Positions 3,491-54,108 of a DNA stretch of 64,000 bases are shown piece after piece. A program made the position numbers and the translations under genes. The notes under the pieces are model-generated. The model did no database searches. It had not been told where the DNA came from and saw only the letters and a program-made list of their open reading frames with translations. This stretch comes from Euprymna scolopes (lineage: Eukaryota), in assembly GCA_053919585.1 (NCBI GenBank), contig CM132786.1. One strand, 5' to 3'. The first letter of the stretch is position 1; each line of letters opens with the position of its first letter.

Positions 3491-4550
3491 CGACAGTAAT
3501 ACATAAAACATTAACCCGGTTATGGATTGATTCAACATGAATTTCTGAGTGTAGTGTAAGTTCAGCACTCCAGTTACTTAAATCCCCCTTTTTTTGGTTT
3601 TGGTTAATGAAGGAGAAATTGGTGGATATTTAAAACTGATTTAATGGCGATAAAGAAAGCAGGTTTTAAGCCAATGTGTTGTTGCGGACTTTCTTTTTGC
3701 CTCCTCAATTTGAAGTTGTTTTTTTTTTCACTTGACGTGAATACTAGAATATTTAAATTAAATGCCCAATATGAACGGGTAAAATAATGGAGGGATAAAA
3801 GGCGAATCAAACTGACATATAAGTTGTTTAAATATTTACAATAAATGTTGCTTAAATTTGCAGTTTTTGAAAAAAAAAAATACAAGTGCGAACTTTCTTT
3901 GCCGGCACTTTGACGAATGTACGACTAATGGAACTTTGGGAGTCGTTGTTTTCTCTTTGATCGACATCTTTTAATCTTAAACTTAAGCGTTTAGATATTA
4001 TTTAGAATATATACACAAGGTCGGTGTTAATTAAAGTTGTATTTTCTATACACAATTTAAGACTGAAATAATATCTTTATTTTCATAGAATATGTAAGAA
4101 GCTCTTATTTTACATGATCCGATTCATTAAAGTATTTACAGAAGCACACAGGCTCATAAAAGAAAATGGTTTATATTACATCTTTATTATTACTGATTAC
4201 CTAATTGCACGTGAGATGTATAATATTGGACTTAAATGTGCGCTAAGTATCTTGAAACAGAAAGATTCGTTGCACGCATGAACAACCGAATGACATAATA
4301 TTTTCCGGCAGGATCTTCCATCAAAAGCTTTAAACAGCGGATGAGAAAATATAAAAAAAATATAAGTGTTCATTTTGCAGAATTTTTTCCCTAAGTTTAT
4401 CTAAACAGACATANNNNNNNNNNNNNNNNNNNNNNNNNNNNNNNNNNNNNNNNNNNNNNNNNNNNNNNNNNNNNNNNNNNNNNNNNNNNNNNNNNNNNNN
4501 NNNNNNNNNNNNNNNNNNNNNNNNNNNNNNNNNNNNNNNNNNNNNNNNNN

Positions 4551-4872
4551 AAATACCTACAGACACTAGTGTTTCATCCTTTCGGGAATCTTCAGTGCAG
4601 GGTGTCATGATTAACATCAGTCGAACGATTCGAACTCAGCAACACGAGACATCTCTGCTTGATTAGCAAAGACCGTATCTATTCGGCTGCCATTAACCGC
4701 GTGAACTAACGTTGAATTTAAACATTTTAACTTTAAATGTTCTTTACGTCAGTCAGACAGTGATCTAATCGCTATACGATGATCTATGCATAAGAGCTAA
4801 TTTGACCGACTTTGATTTAACTGAAAGTGCTCAACGATAAGAAACGAATTTCTTTAAGGGGCTGTCACAATA

Positions 4873-4876
<4 letters not shown>
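4551..4876 (-). mobile_element. tRNA-headed hammerhead repeat, family A (SINE/retrozyme-like monomer)
   Basis: Minus strand reads a tRNA-Ser-like head (GCAGCCGAATAGATACGG...long variable arm...GAGTTCGAATC, ~4700-4617) followed by a hammerhead at 4602-4555. Homologous copies lie at 53749-54108. It abuts an N gap. Confidence 0.75.
4555..4602 (-). ncRNA. Type I hammerhead ribozyme (family A)
   Basis: Minus strand: CCTGCA-CTGAAGA-TTCC CGAAA GGAT-GAAA-CACTAGTG-TC^-TGTAGG. Stem I CCTGCA/TGTAGG pairs (one G.U). Core CUGANGA and GAAA are intact, the cleavage triplet is GUC, and stem III is the palindrome CACTAGTG. The base of stem II is a non-canonical U.U. Confidence 0.75.
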
Positions 4877-4932
<56 letters not shown>

Positions 4933-4940
4933 TATATAAA
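4877..4940. repeat. (TA)n microsatellite separating families A and B
   Basis: Directly visible. Confidence 0.95.
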
Positions 4941-5224
4941 TGTCTGTCGATGACAACAAATATTTTAAACCCCCCTCTTTGGGTAGAACACTGTGGTAAG
5001 TAATCTTACCCGCTACTGAATTGTGTGAAAAATGCGACGCTCGCCCTTTGTTTATGAACAAACCGGTTATATCACTGTACAAATGATGGGCGGGTGGTTG
5101 TTTAAATAGACATTTGGCGAGATTATTTACGGTCACCGCTGCCGTGGGTCGATCGGTAGAAAAGCTGACTATCCACATCATTGTTCTAGGTTCAATCCTC
5201 GGCTTCGGAGAGGTGCTAGTCTAG

Positions 5225-5268
5225 CGGCACTGATGAGTTTTGATACAAAGAAACAGGACTGTATGTCG
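5225..5268 (+). ncRNA. Type I hammerhead ribozyme (family B, copy 1)
   Basis: CGGCA-CTGATGA-GTTTTGATACAAA-GAAA-CAGGACTG-TA^-TGTCG. Stem I CGGCA/TGTCG. The four-copy consensus stem II is GTTG-TGATA-CAAC. Stem III is CAGG(A/C)CTG, a perfect palindrome in copy 2. Confidence 0.8.
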
Positions 5269-5460
5269 ATGACTACAAACATTTTAAGGCTTCCTCTTTG
5301 GTTAGAGCACTGTCGTATATAATCTCACCCGCTCCTTAATTGGCTTAAAAAAATCGACGGTGGTTCTTTGTTCATAAACAAAGCGGTTAGAGCAGTGTGC
5401 AAGTGGTGGGGGTGATATTTCTTTAAATATATATTTGGTAAGATTATTTACGGCCGCCAC

Positions 5461-5532
5461 TCCCGTGCGTCGGTCGGTAGAACTACTGACTTTCAACGCG
5501 ATGGTTCTAGGTTCAATCCTAGGGTTGGGAGA
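5461..5532 (+). promoter_or_regulatory. tRNA-derived internal Pol III promoter (A box/B box) of family B monomer; equivalents at ~5140-5211 and ~5778-5850
   Basis: A-box-like TGCGTCGGTCGG/TGGGTCGAGCGG, B box GGTTCAATCC, anticodon-loop-like CT-TTC-AA, and ends TCCC...GGGA like tRNA-Glu. Stems are degraded, so this is not a functional tRNA. Confidence 0.7.
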
Positions 5533-5545
5533 GGTGCTAGTATAG

Positions 5546-5589
5546 GGAGGCTGATGAGTTGTGATACACCGAAACAGGCCTGTATGTCG
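5546..5589 (+). ncRNA. Hammerhead ribozyme (family B, copy 2; stem I 5' arm mutated)
   Basis: CTGATGA-GTTGTGATACACC-GAAA-CAGGCCTG-TA-TGTCG. Confidence 0.65.
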
Positions 5590-5862
5590 AATACTACATA
5601 TATTTTAAGCTCCCTCTTTGTGTAGAGCACTGTCGTATGTAATCTCACCCGCTACTTAATTGGCTGAAAATGTGATGCTCGCTCTTTCTTTATAAACAAA
5701 GCGGTTAGAGCACTGTGCAAGTGGTGGACGGATGTTAGTTAAAATATACATTTGGCGAGATTATTTAAGGTCGATGCTCCCGTGGGTCGAGCGGTAGAAC
5801 TGCTGACTTTCAACGCGATGGTTATAGGTTCAATCGTCGGCTTGCGCGAGGTGCTAGTATAG

Positions 5863-5905
5863 CGGCACTGATGAAATGTGATACAACGAAACAGGGTTTA
5901 GGTCG
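5863..5905 (+). ncRNA. Degenerate hammerhead (family B, copy 3)
   Basis: CGGCA-CTGATGA-AATGTGATACAAC-GAAA-CAGGGTT-TA-GGTCG. Stems II and III are damaged. Confidence 0.55.
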
Positions 5906-5990
5906 ATGACTACAAATATTTTAAGCTTCTATATTTGGGTAGAGCACTGTCATAAGTAATCTAACCCCCTACTTTGTTGGCTGAAAATTT

Positions 5991-6032
5991 CGACTGACGA
6001 GTTGTGATACAACGAATCAGGACTGTATGCCG
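5991..6032 (+). ncRNA. Degenerate hammerhead (family B, copy 4)
   Basis: CTGACGA-GTTGTGATACAAC-GAAT-CAGGACTG-TA-TGCCG. Perfect stem II, but GAAA is mutated to GAAT. Confidence 0.55.
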
Positions 6033-6039
6033 ATTACTA

Positions 6040-6114
<75 letters not shown>

Positions 6115-9654: not shown

Positions 9655-9968
9655 ATGGTGATGGCTTACATTCCGTTGCCTCCGTTCTGTCTCGAAAGAC
9701 AAAGGATACCCCCTGTAGGTGTAGCTGCGCGTGTAATTATGTAGCAAGAGTTGCGCAACCCCAATCACACCTCTCCTGAATCGACACTACTTGAGTTCAT
9801 TGGCAAGGAAATTCCAAAACCACTGGAAACAATGCAGCGATAAGGTGAGAGAATATATATCACCTAGAAGTCCCAAATGGCCGTCCATATGGTACTGGCT
9901 AGGCTCATCGTTGCTTAACTTTGGTTATCTGACAAGAACTGGTGTGTCAAAGGTGATTATGTCGTGTA
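9655..9968 (-). mobile_element. 5S rRNA-derived head (~9855-9968) plus ~200-bp GC-richer body: SINE3-like element or 5S pseudogene
   Basis: Minus strand ACGACATAATCACCTTTGACACACCAGTTCTTGTCAGATAACCAAAGTTAAGCAACGATGAGCCTAGCCAGTACCATATGGACGGCCATTTGGGACTTCTAGGTG aligns by eye along the length of metazoan 5S rRNA. It continues into non-5S sequence rather than an oligo-T terminator. Confidence 0.7.
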
Positions 9969-10070
9969 TATGATGGCTTACTTGAGAGTGAGTTAAAACA
10001 TAATAAACAGTTCACGGTTGGAATGTAAAGCAACAACGGCGCATCGGAACTTACATCAAAGCGGAGAACT

Positions 10071-10139
<69 letters not shown>

Positions 10140-10142
<3 letters not shown>

Positions 10143-16643: not shown

Positions 16644-18491
16644 ACATTCCACTGATGAATTTACTACTCTTAAAATTCAGTTGGGCGAATTAAATCGGAG
16701 GTTTTCAGCCATAAACACTAAATTTAGCGATTTTGTTAGGCAGAAAAATCATTTTGAAGCGGCAAAATTAATTAGGTCTAATTCCGACATTTATCGTACT
16801 CGCCCAGATAAAGGATAACAAAACGGATTATATCTTCAAAATCTTGGAAATTTTGGACGATAAAAATAAATTTCTCCGGTTGGATGATTTAAGCCACGAT
16901 GACACTTTTCGAATGGAAATAAAAATCCAGAACAGATTTCTTCAACTTTATAAAAGTGGGTTTATTTCTAAGGAGATTTACGATAGAATCCGACTCATTG
17001 GCTCTCAAAGGCCTAGAATGTACGTTTTACCCAAGGTTCATAAACCAAACATTCCTTTGCCACCCATTTTATCTATGTTGGGTTCTGCACAATACGAACT
17101 TGGGAAATGGTTAGTTGATCTTCTTAAACCTTTGCTTTCTTTTTATTCGGTCCATTGTATCTCTGATTCTTTTCAATCTGTGTCTCATATACACAAATTA
17201 TCTTTATCTAAGAATACCGAGTTCTTGGCTTCCTTTGACATTAATAGTCTTTTTACTAATATACCTTTGGATGAAACCATTGGTATTTGTGCTGACTATC
17301 TATATCGTGGCCCCTCAAAATCTCCACAATTTCCTGAACGAATTTTCGTTGAACTGATGGAACTTGCCACTAAATCAGTTTCCTTCAGGGTGAACAGTAT
17401 TATGTACCGGCAAATTGATGATATATCTATGGGTAACCCTCTTGGTCCTTCGCTAGCCAACATTTTCGTTGGATTTTTGGAAAACGAATTATTTTCTAAA
17501 TTACTAAACCAACATTCTATACACGCTACGTTGATGACACTGTTGCATGCTTTCCCTCACGGAGTGAAGCTGAACAGTTTCTTCGTCTTCTTTGTAACTT
17601 GCATCCATCGTTACAATTTACTATGGAGGTCGAGGACTGTGGCTCTCTTCCATTCCTCGATGTTCGTGTTTCTAAAGTTGGTTCTACGCTTGAGACCTCT
17701 GTATACAGAAAACCTACATTTACAGGGCTCTATCGTAATTGGTTTCCTTTGCCCCTCAGTCTAGAAAAAAAAACCTCATGAGCGCTCTTACACATCGTGC
17801 ACTCATGATTTGTTCACCAAACTGTCTTGACGCGGAACTTGGTGAAATCACAAATATTTTTCTCAGCAATGGATACCCCATAAATATAATAAGAACTACT
17901 ATTGGACGTAAAATTGCTACATTTAATAGTGTTAAACGTATTGGTCCATCACGTTGTCCCATTTATTTAAAATTACCATTGTTAGGTCCTGTTGGCCTTC
18001 ATATTGTTAAAAGGATTTCTTCTGCTACTCAACGTTGTTTTACAGCTACTATGCTTAGAGTAGTTTACACAACTCGAACCTTTTTCTCTTCTTTTCATAA
18101 AGATATTTTGCCAACCATTCAAAAGAATTCTGTTGTTTATAAATTTGTTTGTCAGTGTGGAGCTGACTACATTGACAATACATCCCAAAGATTAGAAATT
18201 AAATATCCCAACACATCCCTCGGGATATTCGATTACACCAGGTTTCGGGAACATCTGGACACTCCCAAGCTCATGAGTCCGCCATCGGTAATCACCTGAT
18301 TAGTATAAATAGGTGTTCTGACCAATATTCCGATGGTTGGTTTTCTGTTTTATACAGTGCTAGGTCGAACTATCATCTCAATATCATTGAGGCGTTAGTC
18401 ATTAATAACTCTCGACTTAGCCTGTGTAGACAAAAGATTTTGAAACATCAGTTGGAAATATTTACTGATTTAAAACCACCTGACCAGTGAG

Positions 18492-41900: not shown

Positions 41901-44251
41901 ATGTGTCTGTGTGTGTGTCTGTGCCTGTGTATCCGTGCATTTGTTTGTGTGTATGTGTGTGTTTGTAAATGTATGTGTATATGTATGTATTTGTAGACGN
42001 NNNNNNNNNNNNNNNNNNNNNNNNNNNNNNNNNNNNNNNNNNNNNNNNNNNNNNNNNNNNNNNNNNNNNNNNNNNNNNNNNNNNNNNNNNNNNNNNNNNN
42101 NNNNNNNNNNNNNNNNNNNNNNNNNNNNNNNNNNNNNNNNNNNNNNNNNNNNNNNNNNNNNNNNNNNNNNNNNCTTTCGACTATGTGTTAACTTCTACTA
42201 AATTAAATTTATGTGTGCAATATTAAAATTAATATATAGTTGATTCCGTTACGTTTTAATAGTGTGAGGTTTTACTCCAAATATTGTTTTCAATAGTATT
42301 TAGCGAGATTTATTTAGAATAGTGTAATGTTTCTAGCTTTGTGTATTTATTGTTTTATAAACTGGTTTCCTAACTTTCATTGTTGTTATTGTTTCATTAT
42401 ATTTCGTCTTACTCATCTGGCGGCTACCCTCAGGTGATTAACCATAACGGGATACAGAACGCTGGATATTGCATCTGTATTCCCAGTAATTATGACCTGC
42501 AATATTTGTTTTTTTTACGACGTTTTTACCAAATATAGAAGAAATAACTGAGGATACATTACAAAACTCAGCATTTTTATCCTGTCGTAATTAATTACAT
42601 GGGGGGTGCCAGAGAATTAATTGTCTTGAATGTTGTAAAAACGACAATGAAGATGAGGATAACAGTCTAAAGAAAATAATGCATAAATTATGAAGTTTGA
42701 TTCAAACAGTTTTCAAAACACAATAAAAATAATATAACATTCTCTTTTTCTCAAACGTAAAAAAATACATACTGTTCACTAAAATATTGTTCCAAGATTT
42801 TTACAAATGTAAAGTATCTTCTTTTTCACTTAAAATCTTAACAGGAAGGAAATCATAAAAAAACAGCTTGAGAATAATTTTCATAGTTTATGCTTGGGAA
42901 TAGTCGATGACTATTTACTAGCAAGGAATGATGTTCGTGCATGGCGGTTTCAAATGTAAAGAACTTTATTTAAAACTGAAAACCAAAAAGCTACGTAACC
43001 AAGATTTATAGAATGATAATGTTCGTTCTTAAGTACCCAGCACTTTATTTCTCTACATATCTACAATCATACTCAATAGACTTTTTTCAAGAATAAAATG
43101 ATCGATCATCTTTCGACGTATGCTCATGACAGAGATTACTTTCTAAATGACTCACATGTGATTATTTGAGTGCAATGAAAGATCTTTCCTACCATATATC
43201 TCATTATAATCATGCAATTTCCACTTCGATTTCGTTTCATTTAATGCATAATAGGTTATATTGAATGTCGTATATTATGCGTATTGTTTATTTTCGCCGT
43301 GTTTTTCACAGCGTTCCGTTGATATCGTGTGGCATATACCTGATTTCAATTACTACGTATAAATGTAGAGTTATCTACTGAGCACAGTACTGTTCTTTAA
43401 ATATATTATTAAAAGCTAGTGCTTGTAATGTAGTTTATGCTATATATAATCGAGATAGAAGATACCTTAATAATCATTCTTGATACATTGCACACATTAA
43501 TGTACATTGTTTTATAGAAATATCTAATATTTGATAGTGTGAATGCACAACAGTTGAGGCATACTAAGAGTGTGTACACGATACAGACCGTCTGTAAATT
43601 AGACATATTGATTGCACAGACGATATCATTAAGTTTCATTCACTAGCGTTTTCTGAATAAAAAAAACAATTGTGATATTTATATTCCAATTAAATGTCAA
43701 TTGTATTTTAATTACATTTAGAAGTGTCAAAGTCGGCGACAAATTGTAAAGTAAAACATAAAATAATAAAGTTTATTCGATACACTAATGACAATTCCGA
43801 AATGTGTAAAAAATATAATTCACTTAATACTTCTACGTACTGACTTTACAAAATCAGCGACACATATCTCGTAGTTACGACTCTCTGATGGCAATGCTCA
43901 TAAGAAATGTGCAATCGAATTGAGGAATAACACAATTACAAAAAAAAACTTACAAAACACAATCTTTACTTCAGTGTAAGAGATGTATGAGCATGGTGCC
44001 CATTATATAGTCTTTATATAATAATGGGTAATGTATTTGTATGGATTTTCTATCTTAGAAGTTGTCTTTTACGGAATTGGATTGTAAAATTAGTGTCATT
44101 TAGTATTTCGCACAATATTGGTTGCATTGCATGAGAACAATTTACAACTGCAAGTAAAAAGCAATACAACTAAAGTGATGCACATGCATATATATTATGT
44201 TTTAATAAACATCACCTCTGGCTTAAGTAAATTTAATCAAATAATCAACTA

Positions 44252-51500: not shown

Positions 51501-53748
51501 CTTTAATATATACTGCTCTATACAGTCTTTCCAACAAATCTGTGACTTTATTAGTATTATGTATATTATATACTTTTTCTGGTTACTTGAGTCCGACCAA
51601 CTGTTCCCTACTTTCGTTTAATCGGTGTTCTCATATTATTAGTTTTAATTCATTTTAATGTTTATAGTTTTATATTACTAAGTTGAGCATATCAATTTTC
51701 GTCATTTTATTCTCTGAAATTAGTTTGTAATATATATAATCAACACATTATATTTGTAGCAATGCTACAATTTTCTAGTAATGGATTTCAATGAAACTGC
51801 AATTAATGTAGTAATGGTTGTTCAATAAAACAAGTGAAAAATTGTTGGCAATATAAAAAATATGTAAAAATACAGCGCATTATATTTCAGCTTGAATGAA
51901 ACTTATCTCAAATTAATAAAAAAAGAAACAGTTCTTTACAGGGGAAAGCCTCCAAAATTAGATCCAATGTGGTGATGCATATAGTCTGTTTGGAAGTTTC
52001 AAAGCAGCTGAAGTAATGAAAGAGCGGTTTATCTCGAATCAGATGGGATCGAAGAACGAAAAGAAGAGAACAGCAACATAACATTCTTAATTAGTGATTT
52101 CAGACTAAATTTTAAATTATTAAGATTAGGCTAAAAAAAGACAAGCACGTGAAATTTTGTATTCATCTAACTGGATATTGTCTAGATAGAAAAAAAAACG
52201 ATTCTTTTTCTTAAAAATATTGCAATTCGATGTCACTATAAAACGGGTTGGGAGTTAGGAGTAGAAAGTTATAAGCGTGGCACAATCTTAGAGTTAAAGG
52301 AATTTTAAGGATGTCCAAAAACACATGATTTTTATTATGATGATGATAATGACGACAAAATAATAAAAATAAATATGATATGAATATAATTATAAAAAAA
52401 ATAATAGTATTATATATTAAAATAATATAATAACAACAATTATAAAAATAATAATATAATAATAATAATAATAAATGCAATGTAATGTTAATAATAGAAT
52501 TGTAAATAATCATGTGCAATAATAATAATAGTAATCATATTATCAGTAAAACCACTAGCAATCATTGCATTTTTAGTAATGACAGTATCAATTTTAGTAG
52601 AATGAATGGTAATAAAAATGGCAATAATNNNNNNNNNNNNNNNNNNNNNNNNNNNNNNNNNNNNNNNNNNNNNNNNNNNNNNNNNNNNNNNNNNNNNNNN
52701 NNNNNNNNNNNNNNNNNNNNNNNNNNNNNNNNNNNNNNNNNNNNNNNNNNNNNNNNNNCATAATAGCGGTAATATTCATAGTGATATCACGTGTTGATAT
52801 TATTTTATTGATCTTTATTCTAATTTTAGTTTGATTTTAATTACATATCCAACATGTTTTCACTTGTTCTTTTTTTGGATATTTATGACTACAATAAATT
52901 GCGATTTGACATAATGACATAACTTAAAAAATCGTGCATTGTTATGAATATAAGTTCCTGATTTCTCTCGGTCCTCTGATTAGAAAAATAGCAAGAATAT
53001 CATTATTATAAGGACTTTATGAATTGTTTTAGGAGTAGTCAGTCGAACAATAATTTTGTATCGAAAAATTCAACGTACACTTAATTTTCTTTCTCTCATA
53101 ATAAACTCCACTCTCTATTGCTTATTGAAGTTCTTTAATCGGTTGGGATTAAATTATCTGTATATAAATACTGGTATTTATATTAGATTTTAGTTTACCA
53201 TTGCGTATATCAGGTAAACACTACATACTTTTGAATTCATTACTTAAACGAAACGTAATGTTTAGTGTATTCGAACCCATGCGAAGTTATATATTTTGTT
53301 GAAGCCGCGGAAAACTGGTGCACAAAATTAAAGAAAAAGGATGGAACTTCAAAAGTGAAGATAGAACGACGGCATGACGAATATGCATGCGTAACGAAGT
53401 AGCTACGATTCAAGTATTAATTCATAGACTTGCAGCAAATATTCGGTGATTATCATCCGATCAAGCGATACGCCTGATACCCCTGCTAGTATAAAAACAA
53501 ATAAGAAATCTGCATTAATTAAAAAACACATTTAGGTGTATTTTCTGACCGGGCANNNNNNNNNNNNNNNNNNNNNNNNNNNNNNNNNNNNNNNNNNNNN
53601 NNNNNNNNNNNNNNNNNNNNNNNNNNNNNNNNNNNNNNNNNNNNNNNNNNNNNNNNNNNNNNNNNNNNNNNNNNNNNNNNNNNNNNNNNNNNNNNNNNNN
53701 NNNNNNNNNNNNNNNNNNNNNNNNNNNNNNNNNNNNNNNNNNNNNNNN

Positions 53749-54108
53749 CACCCACTGGTGTTTCATCTTTTCGGGAATTATCAGTGCTGGGTGTCAACGA
53801 TCATCACACGTCGATAGATTTGAACCTTGCAACGGAAGGAATATTATCTTTTAAATCTTGTTCATCTAATCATATGATGGTCTGCACATATCCGCTTAAT
53901 TGACTTACTTTTGTTTCAACTGAAAATGCACAACCATAAGAAACGAATTTCTTTAGGAGGCTGACATAATTATTTACTATTATAATTATTAAATACTTAC
54001 AGACACTAGTGATTCATCCTTTTGGGAATCATCTGTGCAGGGTGTCACGATTAACACCAGACGATAGATTCGAACTTGGCAACAGAAGCAAGCTCTTGCT
54101 TCGTTGGT
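53749..54108 (-). mobile_element. Two tandem degenerate copies of tRNA-headed hammerhead family A
   Basis: 53749-53990 and 53991-54108 match 4551-4876 (AGACACTAGTG.TTCATCCTTT.GGGAATC, GATTCGAAC, AAGAAACGAATTTCTTTA.G.GGCTG). Cores are mutated (CTGATAA/GGG; CAGATGA/GAATC). Abuts an N gap. Confidence 0.85.

What the first reader, a model, noticed from the sequence alone, without database searches (positions are those of the whole stretch)
4551..4876. Second, unrelated tRNA-headed hammerhead family (family A) with U.U at the base of stem II
Seen: on the minus strand, a tRNA-Ser-like head with a long variable arm and B box GAGTTCGAATC is followed by CCTGCA CTGAAGA TTCCCGAAAGGAT GAAA CACTAGTG TC^TGTAGG. 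Primary sequence is unlike family B, yet the layout is the same. All three copies in the window keep T...T at hammerhead positions 10.1/11.1, where a purine-pyrimidine pair (usually G-C) is standard, so it looks like a family trait rather than decay. Inference: the tRNA-head + hammerhead design arose at least twice from different tRNAs in this genome, and family A may carry a core-adjacent variant ribozyme.
Basis: partly seen in the sequence, partly recalled or inferred. Interest (0 to 1): 0.8.

Follow-up and report, generated by a model that had tools for sequence, protein, structure and literature searches.

The report
Hammerhead repeat family with U·U pair
This is one old copy of a very abundant, non-coding mobile repeat of a large mollusc genome that carries a self-cutting "hammerhead" RNA motif whose usually invariant G-C pair next to the catalytic core is replaced by U·U in the whole family; both the element type and this rare U·U variant are already described, so it is a new example of a known kind.

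Summary
The motif is real. On the minus strand, 4556-4601 holds a complete type I hammerhead. It is the only hit in the window to a strict descriptor, and 0 of 200 shuffles gave any hit.

T/T at positions 10.1/11.1 is also real. It is the dominant state across thousands of contigs from two differently labelled organisms.

The other two window copies (53749-54084) keep T..T but have dead cores. They add no independent support.

U10.1·U11.1 is not a new ribozyme variant. Perreault et al. 2011 reported natural hammerheads with this mismatch. They cite earlier mutagenesis in which U·U was the most active mispair.

The "tRNA-Ser head" is not confirmed:
- Rfam and ARAGORN find no tRNA.
- The B-box match in this copy is at chance level.
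- No A box is found in the head.

The element behaves like an animal non-LTR retrozyme or an Sm-alpha-like SINE. Its unit is about 341 nt, it forms tandem junctions in DNA, it sits in (TA)n, and its 8-nt palindromic stem III predicts dimer-dependent cleavage. Cleavage, circles and Pol III transcription are not shown.

The scan had already noted this tRNA-Ser-like hammerhead family elsewhere in the genome.

Verdict: a new member of a known kind, of moderate interest.

The parts
4551..4876 (-). Family A copy 1: about one unit of the repeat. Its 5' end abuts (TA)n and its 3' end runs into a masked N run, which I did not examine.
   Evidence: One search shows many private substitutions against the family majority (for example 4608, 4617, 4689, 4706, 4772, 4818, 4855), so this is an old copy.
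4556..4601 (-). Complete type I hammerhead motif. Stem I has 6 bp and the core is CUGAAGA. Stem II is U10.1·U11.1 plus 3 Watson-Crick pairs with loop CGAAA. Then come GAAA, a palindromic stem III (CACUAGUG) and a GUC site. The predicted cut is between 4562 and 4561.
   Evidence: One search gives the sequence. Rfam RF00163 at 20.3 bits; the only descriptor hit in the window, 0 of 200 shuffles; folding.
4576..4588 (-). Stem-loop II, flanked by T4588 (position 10.1) and T4576 (position 11.1).
   Evidence: One search lists no variant here in two organisms' DNA; 12 unrelated hammerheads with the same stem-loop II all have G-C.
4564..4571 (-). 8-nt palindrome forming stem III. It is too short to close as a hairpin and is predicted to pair between two copies (double hammerhead).
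   Evidence: the predicted dimer is -27.0 kcal/mol against -7.7 for a monomer. The monomer's lowest-energy fold is not the hammerhead fold, which scores -4.8.
4626..4637 (-). B-box-like motif (GAGTTCGAATCG). The family majority has G at 4636, giving GGTTCGAATC.
   Evidence: chance-level match in this copy; 4636 reads the other letter in 75-94% of depth.
4877..4945 (.). (TA)n microsatellite directly upstream of the unit. The family B array lies on its other side. This is the presumed insertion target.
53996..54084 (-). Family A copy 2: a 5'-truncated unit with part of the head and a hammerhead with a dead core (CAGAUGA, GAAU). T..T is kept. It is joined head-to-tail to copy 3.
53749..53995 (-). 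Family A copy 3: AT-rich linker plus a unit with an internal deletion. The hammerhead core is dead (CUGAUAA, and GG in place of UC). T..T is kept. It runs into a masked N run.

Best explanation
Window 4551-4876 (minus strand) is an old copy of a high-copy, non-coding, RNA-mobilised repeat. It is of the animal non-LTR retrozyme / Schistosoma Sm-alpha type.

Shown here:
- The unit is about 341 nt and occurs head-to-tail in the genome.
- It carries a type I hammerhead near its 3' end and sits in a (TA)n microsatellite.
- Across the family and in at least two organisms, the hammerhead keeps every core position, a 6-bp stem I, an 8-nt palindromic stem III and a U·U opposition at 10.1/11.1.

Inferred mechanism:
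1. Multimeric transcripts fold two neighbouring hammerheads into a double hammerhead through the palindromic stem III.
2. [quoted passage not shown]
3. A tRNA ligase can circularise these RNAs.
4. A Penelope-like reverse transcriptase/endonuclease, with its known preference for (TA)n, copies them back into DNA as tandem or 5'-truncated units.

The U·U pair is expected to weaken cleavage but not abolish it. It is a known, tolerated natural variant.

The upstream 'head' retains at most a B-box-like Pol III motif. Its tRNA ancestry is plausible but not demonstrated.
For: - The motif is beyond chance: it is the only descriptor hit in the window and 0 of 200 shuffles gave any hit. Rfam Hammerhead_1 aligns it over its full length.
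- Family size and conservation: thousands of contigs were laid on it from two organisms' DNA runs. Inside the hammerhead only N7 is listed as variable, and G at 10.1 or 11.1 is excluded at >=5%.
- Exact 31-mers of 4551-4680 occur in DNA runs under six organism labels.
- Tandem junctions (4871 to 4551, plus about 20 AT-rich letters) appear in both DNA contigs and RNA reads. A head-to-tail pair lies in the window.
- The dimer fold is strongly favoured over the monomer.
- (TA)n lies at the 5' flank, and a second hammerhead family is inserted in the same microsatellite.
- Literature: U10.1-U11.1 occurs naturally and is the most active mispair (PMC3088659). Canonical metazoan type I hammerheads have a 6-bp helix I, a 4-bp helix II and a short palindromic helix III that acts in dimers (PMC4209133). 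Animal retrozymes are 170-400-nt tandem repeats giving tRNA-ligase-made circles (PMC7229834). PLEs prefer (TA)n (PMC8557442). Retrozymes are related to PLE pLTRs (bioRxiv 10.64898/2026.07.22.740005). Sm-alpha is a tRNA-derived SINE with a hammerhead (PMC2770079).
Against: - There is no direct evidence of cleavage. In poly(A) RNA raw reads no pile-up of read ends occurs at 4562|4561 (table 6). Those reads largely come from read-through transcripts and show a 3-4:1 strand bias of unknown sense.
- The tandem joints also exist in DNA, so they do not show circles.
- The hammerhead scores below Rfam's gathering threshold (20.3 against 34).
- G10.1 contributes to a metal site, so U·U may reduce activity strongly in this context.
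- No tRNA is detectable in the head and the box matches are at chance level. Pol III transcription is therefore unsupported.
- No Penelope partner was identified here.
- 100 of the 140 variant places were not shown. Minor (5-10%) A-U or U-A variants at 10.1/11.1 in organism A cannot be excluded.
Confidence: 0.65

Rival explanations
1. The hammerhead-shaped tail no longer cuts, or cuts negligibly. On this reading it is conserved because it is the 3' recognition or priming module for the reverse transcriptase that copies the element, as with hammerhead-bearing pLTRs of Penelope-like elements. The U·U pair would then be tolerated because catalysis is not selected.
For: - There are no read ends at the predicted cut site in poly(A) RNA.
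- The hammerhead module is the most deeply covered part. It is also joined to at least one other head subfamily: loose ends at 4613 appear in 200 contigs. That fits a shared 3' module.
- PLE-associated hammerheads have low activity in vitro and an unclear role (PMC4209133; PMC8557442).
- G10.1-C11.1 is otherwise 'highly conserved'.
Against: - Every catalytic core position, the GUC site, stem I pairing and the palindromic stem III are kept family-wide, and the only listed polymorphism is the unconstrained N7. That is the pattern expected for selection on catalysis.
- U·U is the mispair that retains most activity.
- Poly(A) RNA-seq is a poor assay for cleaved, non-polyadenylated products.
Confidence: 0.25
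2. Family A is an independent invention in which a tRNA-Ser gene became fused to a hammerhead. It carries a previously unknown core-adjacent ribozyme variant.
For: - Families A and B are not alignable yet share the same layout. In both, the spacing from the B-box-like motif to the hammerhead is about 25 nt.
- The family majority restores GGTTCGAATC.
- Other first-stage notes on this genome also call the head tRNA-Ser(GCU)-like. These are unchecked AI notes.
Against: - The U·U variant is already published.
- No tRNA model recognises the head, even with majority letters. There is no A box, and the B box is at chance level in this copy.
- The hammerhead's stem-loop II (UCC-CGAAA-GGA) is the common natural one apart from the two U's. 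This suggests descent from an ordinary hammerhead module.
- The same tail is found on another head subfamily. That points to module exchange rather than separate invention.
Confidence: 0.15
3. A chance hammerhead-like string in a decayed, ordinary tRNA-derived SINE moved by a LINE.
For: - The Rfam score is below the gathering threshold.
- AT-rich genomes give many loose CTGANGA...GAAA matches: 32 found against 9.8 expected.
Against: - A strict descriptor gives 0 hits in 200 shuffles.
- The motif is conserved over thousands of copies and several organisms.
- Tandem junctions and a (TA)n target are not LINE/SINE hallmarks.
- No poly(A) tail is seen.
Confidence: 0.02

Closest known systems
Animal non-LTR retrozymes (Cervera & de la Peña 2020, PMC7229834), including the roughly 350-nt Mytilus elements
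   Same: - Non-coding, AT-rich tandem units of 170-400 nt.
- One type I hammerhead per unit.
- A short palindromic helix III, implying dimer action.
- Very high copy number, and a mollusc host.
   Different: - Circular or linear unit RNAs are not shown here.
- The 10.1/11.1 pair is U·U instead of G-C.
- A B-box-like motif lies upstream of the ribozyme.
- I found no published description in a cephalopod-like genome: two papers were listed (four hold both terms). I read PMC8557442 and it does not describe these elements; I did not open PMC11662667.
Schistosoma Sm-alpha / Sj-alpha SINE-like elements (Ferbeyre 1998; Laha 2000; PMC2770079)
   Same: - About 330-nt unit.
- A Pol III-type head followed by a type I hammerhead.
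- Stem-loop II is almost the same string: GUCC...GGAC there, UUCC...GGAU here (alignment).
- Tens of thousands of copies.
   Different: - tRNAscan-SE recognises the Sm-alpha head as tRNA-Gln. Here no tRNA finder recognises the head.
- Sm-alpha has G10.1-C11.1.
- The host phylum differs.
Natural hammerheads with a U10.1-U11.1 mismatch (Perreault et al. 2011, PMC3088659, Fig. 5)
   Same: The same non-canonical opposition at the first pair of stem II. It is described there as surprising but compatible with activity.
   Different: Those were presented as rare variants among thousands of sequences. Here the mismatch is fixed in a very large repeat family and shared between organisms. I could not retrieve which organisms carried the published examples.
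Penelope-like-element hammerheads (Cervera & de la Peña 2014, PMC4209133)
   Same: - Dimer-type hammerheads in retroelement termini.
- Palindromic positions in stem III.
- (TA)n targeting by PLE endonucleases.
   Different: - PLE minimal hammerheads lack helix III, have a long helix II and an extra unpaired base between positions 9 and 10.1, and keep G10.1-C11.1.
- Family A has the 'canonical metazoan' 6/4/short architecture, with an extra U on both sides, which amounts to a U·U pair.

Membership tests
Hammerhead ribozyme, type I (Rfam RF00163) | Conserved core: C3 U4 G5 A6 N7 G8 A9, G12 A13 A14, A15.1-U16.1, and H17 at the cut site | tested here: met
   All positions are present in copy 1. 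Copies 2 and 3 fail: U4>A with A15.1>U, and G8>A with UC>GG.
Hammerhead ribozyme, type I (Rfam RF00163) | Three helices around the core, with stem I open (type I topology) | tested here: met
   Stem I has 6 bp. Stem II has 3 Watson-Crick pairs plus U·U. Stem III is a short palindrome.
Hammerhead ribozyme, type I (Rfam RF00163) | G10.1-C11.1 pair closing stem II | tested here: not met
   The pair is U·U in this copy and in the family majority. It is a documented tolerated exception.
Hammerhead ribozyme, type I (Rfam RF00163) | Score at or above Rfam's gathering threshold | tested here: not met
   20.3 bits against 34. E = 0.021 in a 350-nt search. Not listed in the whole-window search.
Hammerhead ribozyme, type I (Rfam RF00163) | Site-specific self-cleavage | tested here: inconclusive
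   No pile-up of read ends at 4562|4561 in poly(A) RNA reads. That library is unsuited to cleaved non-polyadenylated RNA.
Animal non-LTR retrozyme | Head-to-tail genomic repeats of 170-400 bp, each with a type I hammerhead | tested here: met
   Joints 4871>4551 with about 20 letters between them occur in DNA contigs of two organisms. Copies 2 and 3 are in tandem in the window.
Animal non-LTR retrozyme | Unit-length linear and circular RNAs in vivo | tested here: inconclusive
   The same joints appear in RNA reads (41 reads, 24 start points). They also exist as DNA, so they do not prove circles.
Animal non-LTR retrozyme | Mobilisation by Penelope-like elements | not tested
   There is only indirect evidence: the (TA)n target and the literature. 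A weak RT-like ORF at 16844-18299 was not classified.
tRNA-derived SINE (Sm-alpha type) | Head recognisable as a tRNA or tRNA pseudogene | tested here: not met
   ARAGORN finds 0 genes. It finds none with majority letters at default or relaxed thresholds. Rfam gives no tRNA match at E<=10 in 126-, 350- and 382-nt searches.
tRNA-derived SINE (Sm-alpha type) | Internal Pol III promoter: A box TRGCNNAGTGG and B box GGTTCGANTCC | tested here: inconclusive
   The B box has 2 mismatches in this copy, which is chance level (20 found against 18.7 expected). The family majority has 1 mismatch. No A box with <=2 mismatches lies in the head.
tRNA-derived SINE (Sm-alpha type) | LINE-type 3' tail or poly(A) | tested here: not met
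   In the unmasked tandem copy the 3' side of the hammerhead is a short AT-rich linker leading into the next unit. The 3' side of copy 1 is masked and was not examined.

The most novel reading that the evidence does not exclude
Family A would be the first very large, cross-species animal hammerhead lineage in which U10.1·U11.1 replaces the G-C pair that helps bind the catalytic metal, while the ribozyme still cleaves efficiently as a double hammerhead. On this reading selection has tuned the cleavage/ligation balance or the metal dependence of a retrozyme. The family would then be a natural test bed for the role of G10.1.
Probability: 0.3. Interest if true: 0.5.

Novelty: new member of a known kind. 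Interest (0 to 1): 0.33.

Why it matters
It adds a mollusc lineage, probably a cephalopod according to earlier unchecked scan notes, to the hosts of hammerhead-bearing retrozyme/SINE elements.

It also shows that the rare U10.1·U11.1 variant can be fixed in a family of thousands of copies shared between organisms.

For ribozyme biochemistry this offers a natural sequence for measuring what the G10.1-C11.1 pair contributes in an extended, dimer-type hammerhead. For genome annotation it warns that Rfam's gathering threshold misses the whole family. It does not change the current picture of how such elements work.

Tried and rejected
- Rfam at gathering and at E<=10 on the whole window gave no hammerhead or tRNA hits. 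Only a narrow search recovered Hammerhead_1.
- A loose CTGANGA...GAAA...TH pattern was uninformative: 32 matches against 9.8 expected.
- tRNA detection in the head failed with ARAGORN and Rfam. It also failed after substituting nine family-majority letters. ARAGORN at an 80% threshold force-fitted a meaningless 'tRNA-Asp(atc)'.
- I looked for more copies in public contig collections. The family-specific pattern found nothing in metagenome contigs.
- A relaxed stem-loop II pattern found 12 unrelated hammerheads, all with G-C. They serve only as a control.
- Two papers were not held: Ferbeyre 1998 and Lünse 2017.
- The supplements of Perreault 2011 did not reveal which organisms carry the published U·U examples.
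[quoted passage not shown] I rejected this because it would leave an unmatched extra U before G12 as well. A U·U opposition is the simpler reading.

Full report
**What is there**

- Stem I is CCTGCA (4601-4596), pairing with TGTAGG (4561-4556).
- The core is CTGAAGA (4595-4589).
- T4588 is followed by TCC-CGAAA-GGA, then T4576, then GAAA (4575-4572).
- The palindrome CACTAGTG is at 4571-4564, followed by TC (4563-4562).
- The predicted cut lies between 4562 and 4561, at a canonical GUC site.

I wrote a strict descriptor for this motif. It requires stem I of at least 5 of 6 pairs, CTGANGA, a 3-bp stem II with any letters at 10.1/11.1, GAAA, a closed stem III and UH. It finds only this site in the 64-kb window and nothing in 200 dinucleotide shuffles.

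Rfam's type I hammerhead model aligns the site end to end at 20.3 bits. That is below the gathering score of 34. E = 0.021 in a 350-nt search. At whole-window scale the site is not listed.

**Other copies in the window**

BLAST of the element against the window finds two more copies in a head-to-tail pair, at about 53996-54084 and 53749-53995 on the minus strand. Both keep T..T around stem II, but both are dead.
- Copy 2 has CAGATGA and GAAT.
- Copy 3 has CTGATAA and GG in place of TC, plus an internal deletion.
- Neither scores as a hammerhead.

These copies show shared descent, not function.

**Is U·U a family trait?**

It also placed RNA contigs and poly(A) RNA raw reads.

This copy differs from the family majority at many places outside the ribozyme. 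Examples where the other letter holds 94-99.8% of depth are 4608, 4617, 4689, 4706, 4772, 4818 and 4855. It is therefore an old copy.

Inside the hammerhead the only listed variant is 4591. That is N7, the one unconstrained core position (A or U: 31% U in organism A, 92% in organism E).

Only 40 of 140 variant places were printed, so I used the per-run tallies of change types.
- All A>C places in the three contig runs are accounted for elsewhere. G at 10.1 or 11.1 is therefore below 5%.
- In organism E all A>T places are also accounted for. No Watson-Crick or wobble pair at 10.1/11.1 reaches 5% there.
- In organism A, minor A-U or U-A variants cannot be excluded.

Exact 31-mers of 4551-4680 occur in DNA runs under six organism labels.

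**Is the variant new?**

No. Perreault et al. [quoted passage not shown] They call this surprising, because it is the most conserved pair after A15.1-U16.1. [quoted passage not shown] 1990 (PMC3088659).

The variant is nonetheless rare. I scanned metagenome and viral contig collections for the same stem-loop II with free letters at N7, 10.1 and 11.1. All 12 hits had G-C. Cervera & de la Peña 2014 call G10.1-C11.1 'highly conserved'.

Apart from the two U's, stem-loop II is the ordinary metazoan one. Compare it with the Rfam consensus GUCC...GGAC.

**The 'tRNA-Ser head'**

This part is not confirmed.
- ARAGORN finds no tRNA in the window.
- Rfam finds no tRNA at E<=10 in searches of 126, 350 and 382 nt around the three heads.
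- ARAGORN still finds none, at default or relaxed thresholds, after nine family-majority letters are substituted.
- The B-box match of this copy has two mismatches. Such matches occur at chance frequency in the window: 20 found against 18.7 expected.
- No A box with up to two mismatches lies in the head.

In favour of a Pol III-type origin, the family majority restores GGTTCGAATC (4636). A second head subfamily joined to the same tail at 4613 has GGGTTCGAATC (loose ends in 200 contigs). A decayed tRNA-derived promoter is therefore plausible, but it is an inference.

Families A and B are not alignable. The local alignment score is 21 against a null of 18.6 ± 2.3, and 57 of 300 shuffles score at least as high. 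That does not establish independent origin. The shared tail on different heads points to exchange of modules.

**What kind of element is it?**

Joints from 4871 back to 4551, with about 20 AT-rich letters between them, occur in DNA contigs of both organisms and in RNA reads. This gives a tandem unit of about 341 nt.

The window's second locus is a 5'-truncated unit followed by another unit. Copy 1 abuts a (TA)n tract, and a family B hammerhead array lies on the other side of that tract.

These features fit animal non-LTR retrozymes and Sm-alpha-type elements:
- tandem units,
- 5' truncation,
- a (TA)n target,
- no coding capacity,
- a type I hammerhead with a 6-bp helix I, a 4-position helix II and a short palindromic helix III.

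The supporting literature is PMC7229834, PMC4209133 and PMC2770079. Penelope-like elements are known to prefer (TA)n (PMC8557442). Retrozymes have been linked to PLE pLTRs (bioRxiv 10.64898/2026.07.22.740005).

Folding supports dimer action. The monomer's lowest-energy fold (-7.7 kcal/mol) is not the hammerhead fold (-4.8 kcal/mol). Two copies together form a 10-bp intermolecular helix III with trans stems I at -27.0 kcal/mol.

**What is not shown**

- *Cleavage.* The poly(A) RNA reads show no pile-up of ends at the predicted site. That library is unsuitable for cleaved products. Many reads come from one read-through locus, and the 3-4:1 strand bias cannot be oriented without knowing the library chemistry.
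- *Circles.* The joints also exist as DNA.
- *Pol III transcription and the identity of the mobilising enzyme.* Neither was tested.

A credible rival (about 0.25) is that the tail is kept as a recognition module for the reverse transcriptase rather than for catalysis. Against it, every catalytic position is kept family-wide and only N7 varies.

**Verdict**

Both the element type and the variant are already described. The tRNA-Ser origin is unproven.

Earlier notes of this scan (s1-244825 and others) had already recorded a tRNA-Ser-like hammerhead family with a roughly 347-bp unit elsewhere in this genome. They filed it as a new example of a known kind, and I reach the same class independently. 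None of the notes shown mentions the U·U pair.

Noticed in passing
window 9852-9969 (-): A 5S rRNA-like sequence scores above Rfam's gathering threshold (44.5 bits against 38) but has many mispairs. It lies just downstream of a (TA)n tract (10071-10141). It may be a 5S pseudogene or a 5S-derived SINE inserted in the microsatellite. No hammerhead follows it.
   Followed up: partly
window 4941-6044 (+): A family B hammerhead array of about 3.3 units of roughly 320 bp, with a palindromic stem III (CAGGCCTG). It is inserted on the other side of the same (TA)n tract as family A copy 1. The microsatellite seems to be a repeated insertion target. Unit 2 keeps G10.1-C11.1.
   Followed up: partly
window 4613 (loose ends): In 200 DNA contigs of organism A and 162 of organism E, the same hammerhead tail continues upstream of 4613 into a different, more canonical T-arm-like head containing GGGTTCGAATC. 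This is either a second head subfamily or a head swap.
   Followed up: no
window 4551-4876, run X23: Poly(A) RNA reads on the family show a 3-4:1 strand bias. One specific flank accounts for 68 reads at 4553 with 0.83 agreement. Much of the signal therefore comes from read-through of one expressed locus.
   Followed up: no
window 16844-18299 (+): Two adjacent ORFs of 306 and 186 aa. The first has a weak reverse-transcriptase match (RVT_1, 17.4 bits, below the cut-off). It is probably a decayed retroelement. I did not classify it as Penelope-like or LINE.
   Followed up: partly
window 4414-4550 and 53556-53748: Masked N runs begin immediately 3' of two of the three family A copies. The other two N runs in the window (42000-42173 and 52629-52758) are not next to such elements.
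   Followed up: no
L003, L004, L008 (metagenome contigs): Three contigs carry canonical metazoan-style type I hammerheads with GUCC-CGAAA-GGAC, a palindromic AGCU stem III and a GUC site. They are probably eukaryotic DNA in metagenomes.
   Followed up: no
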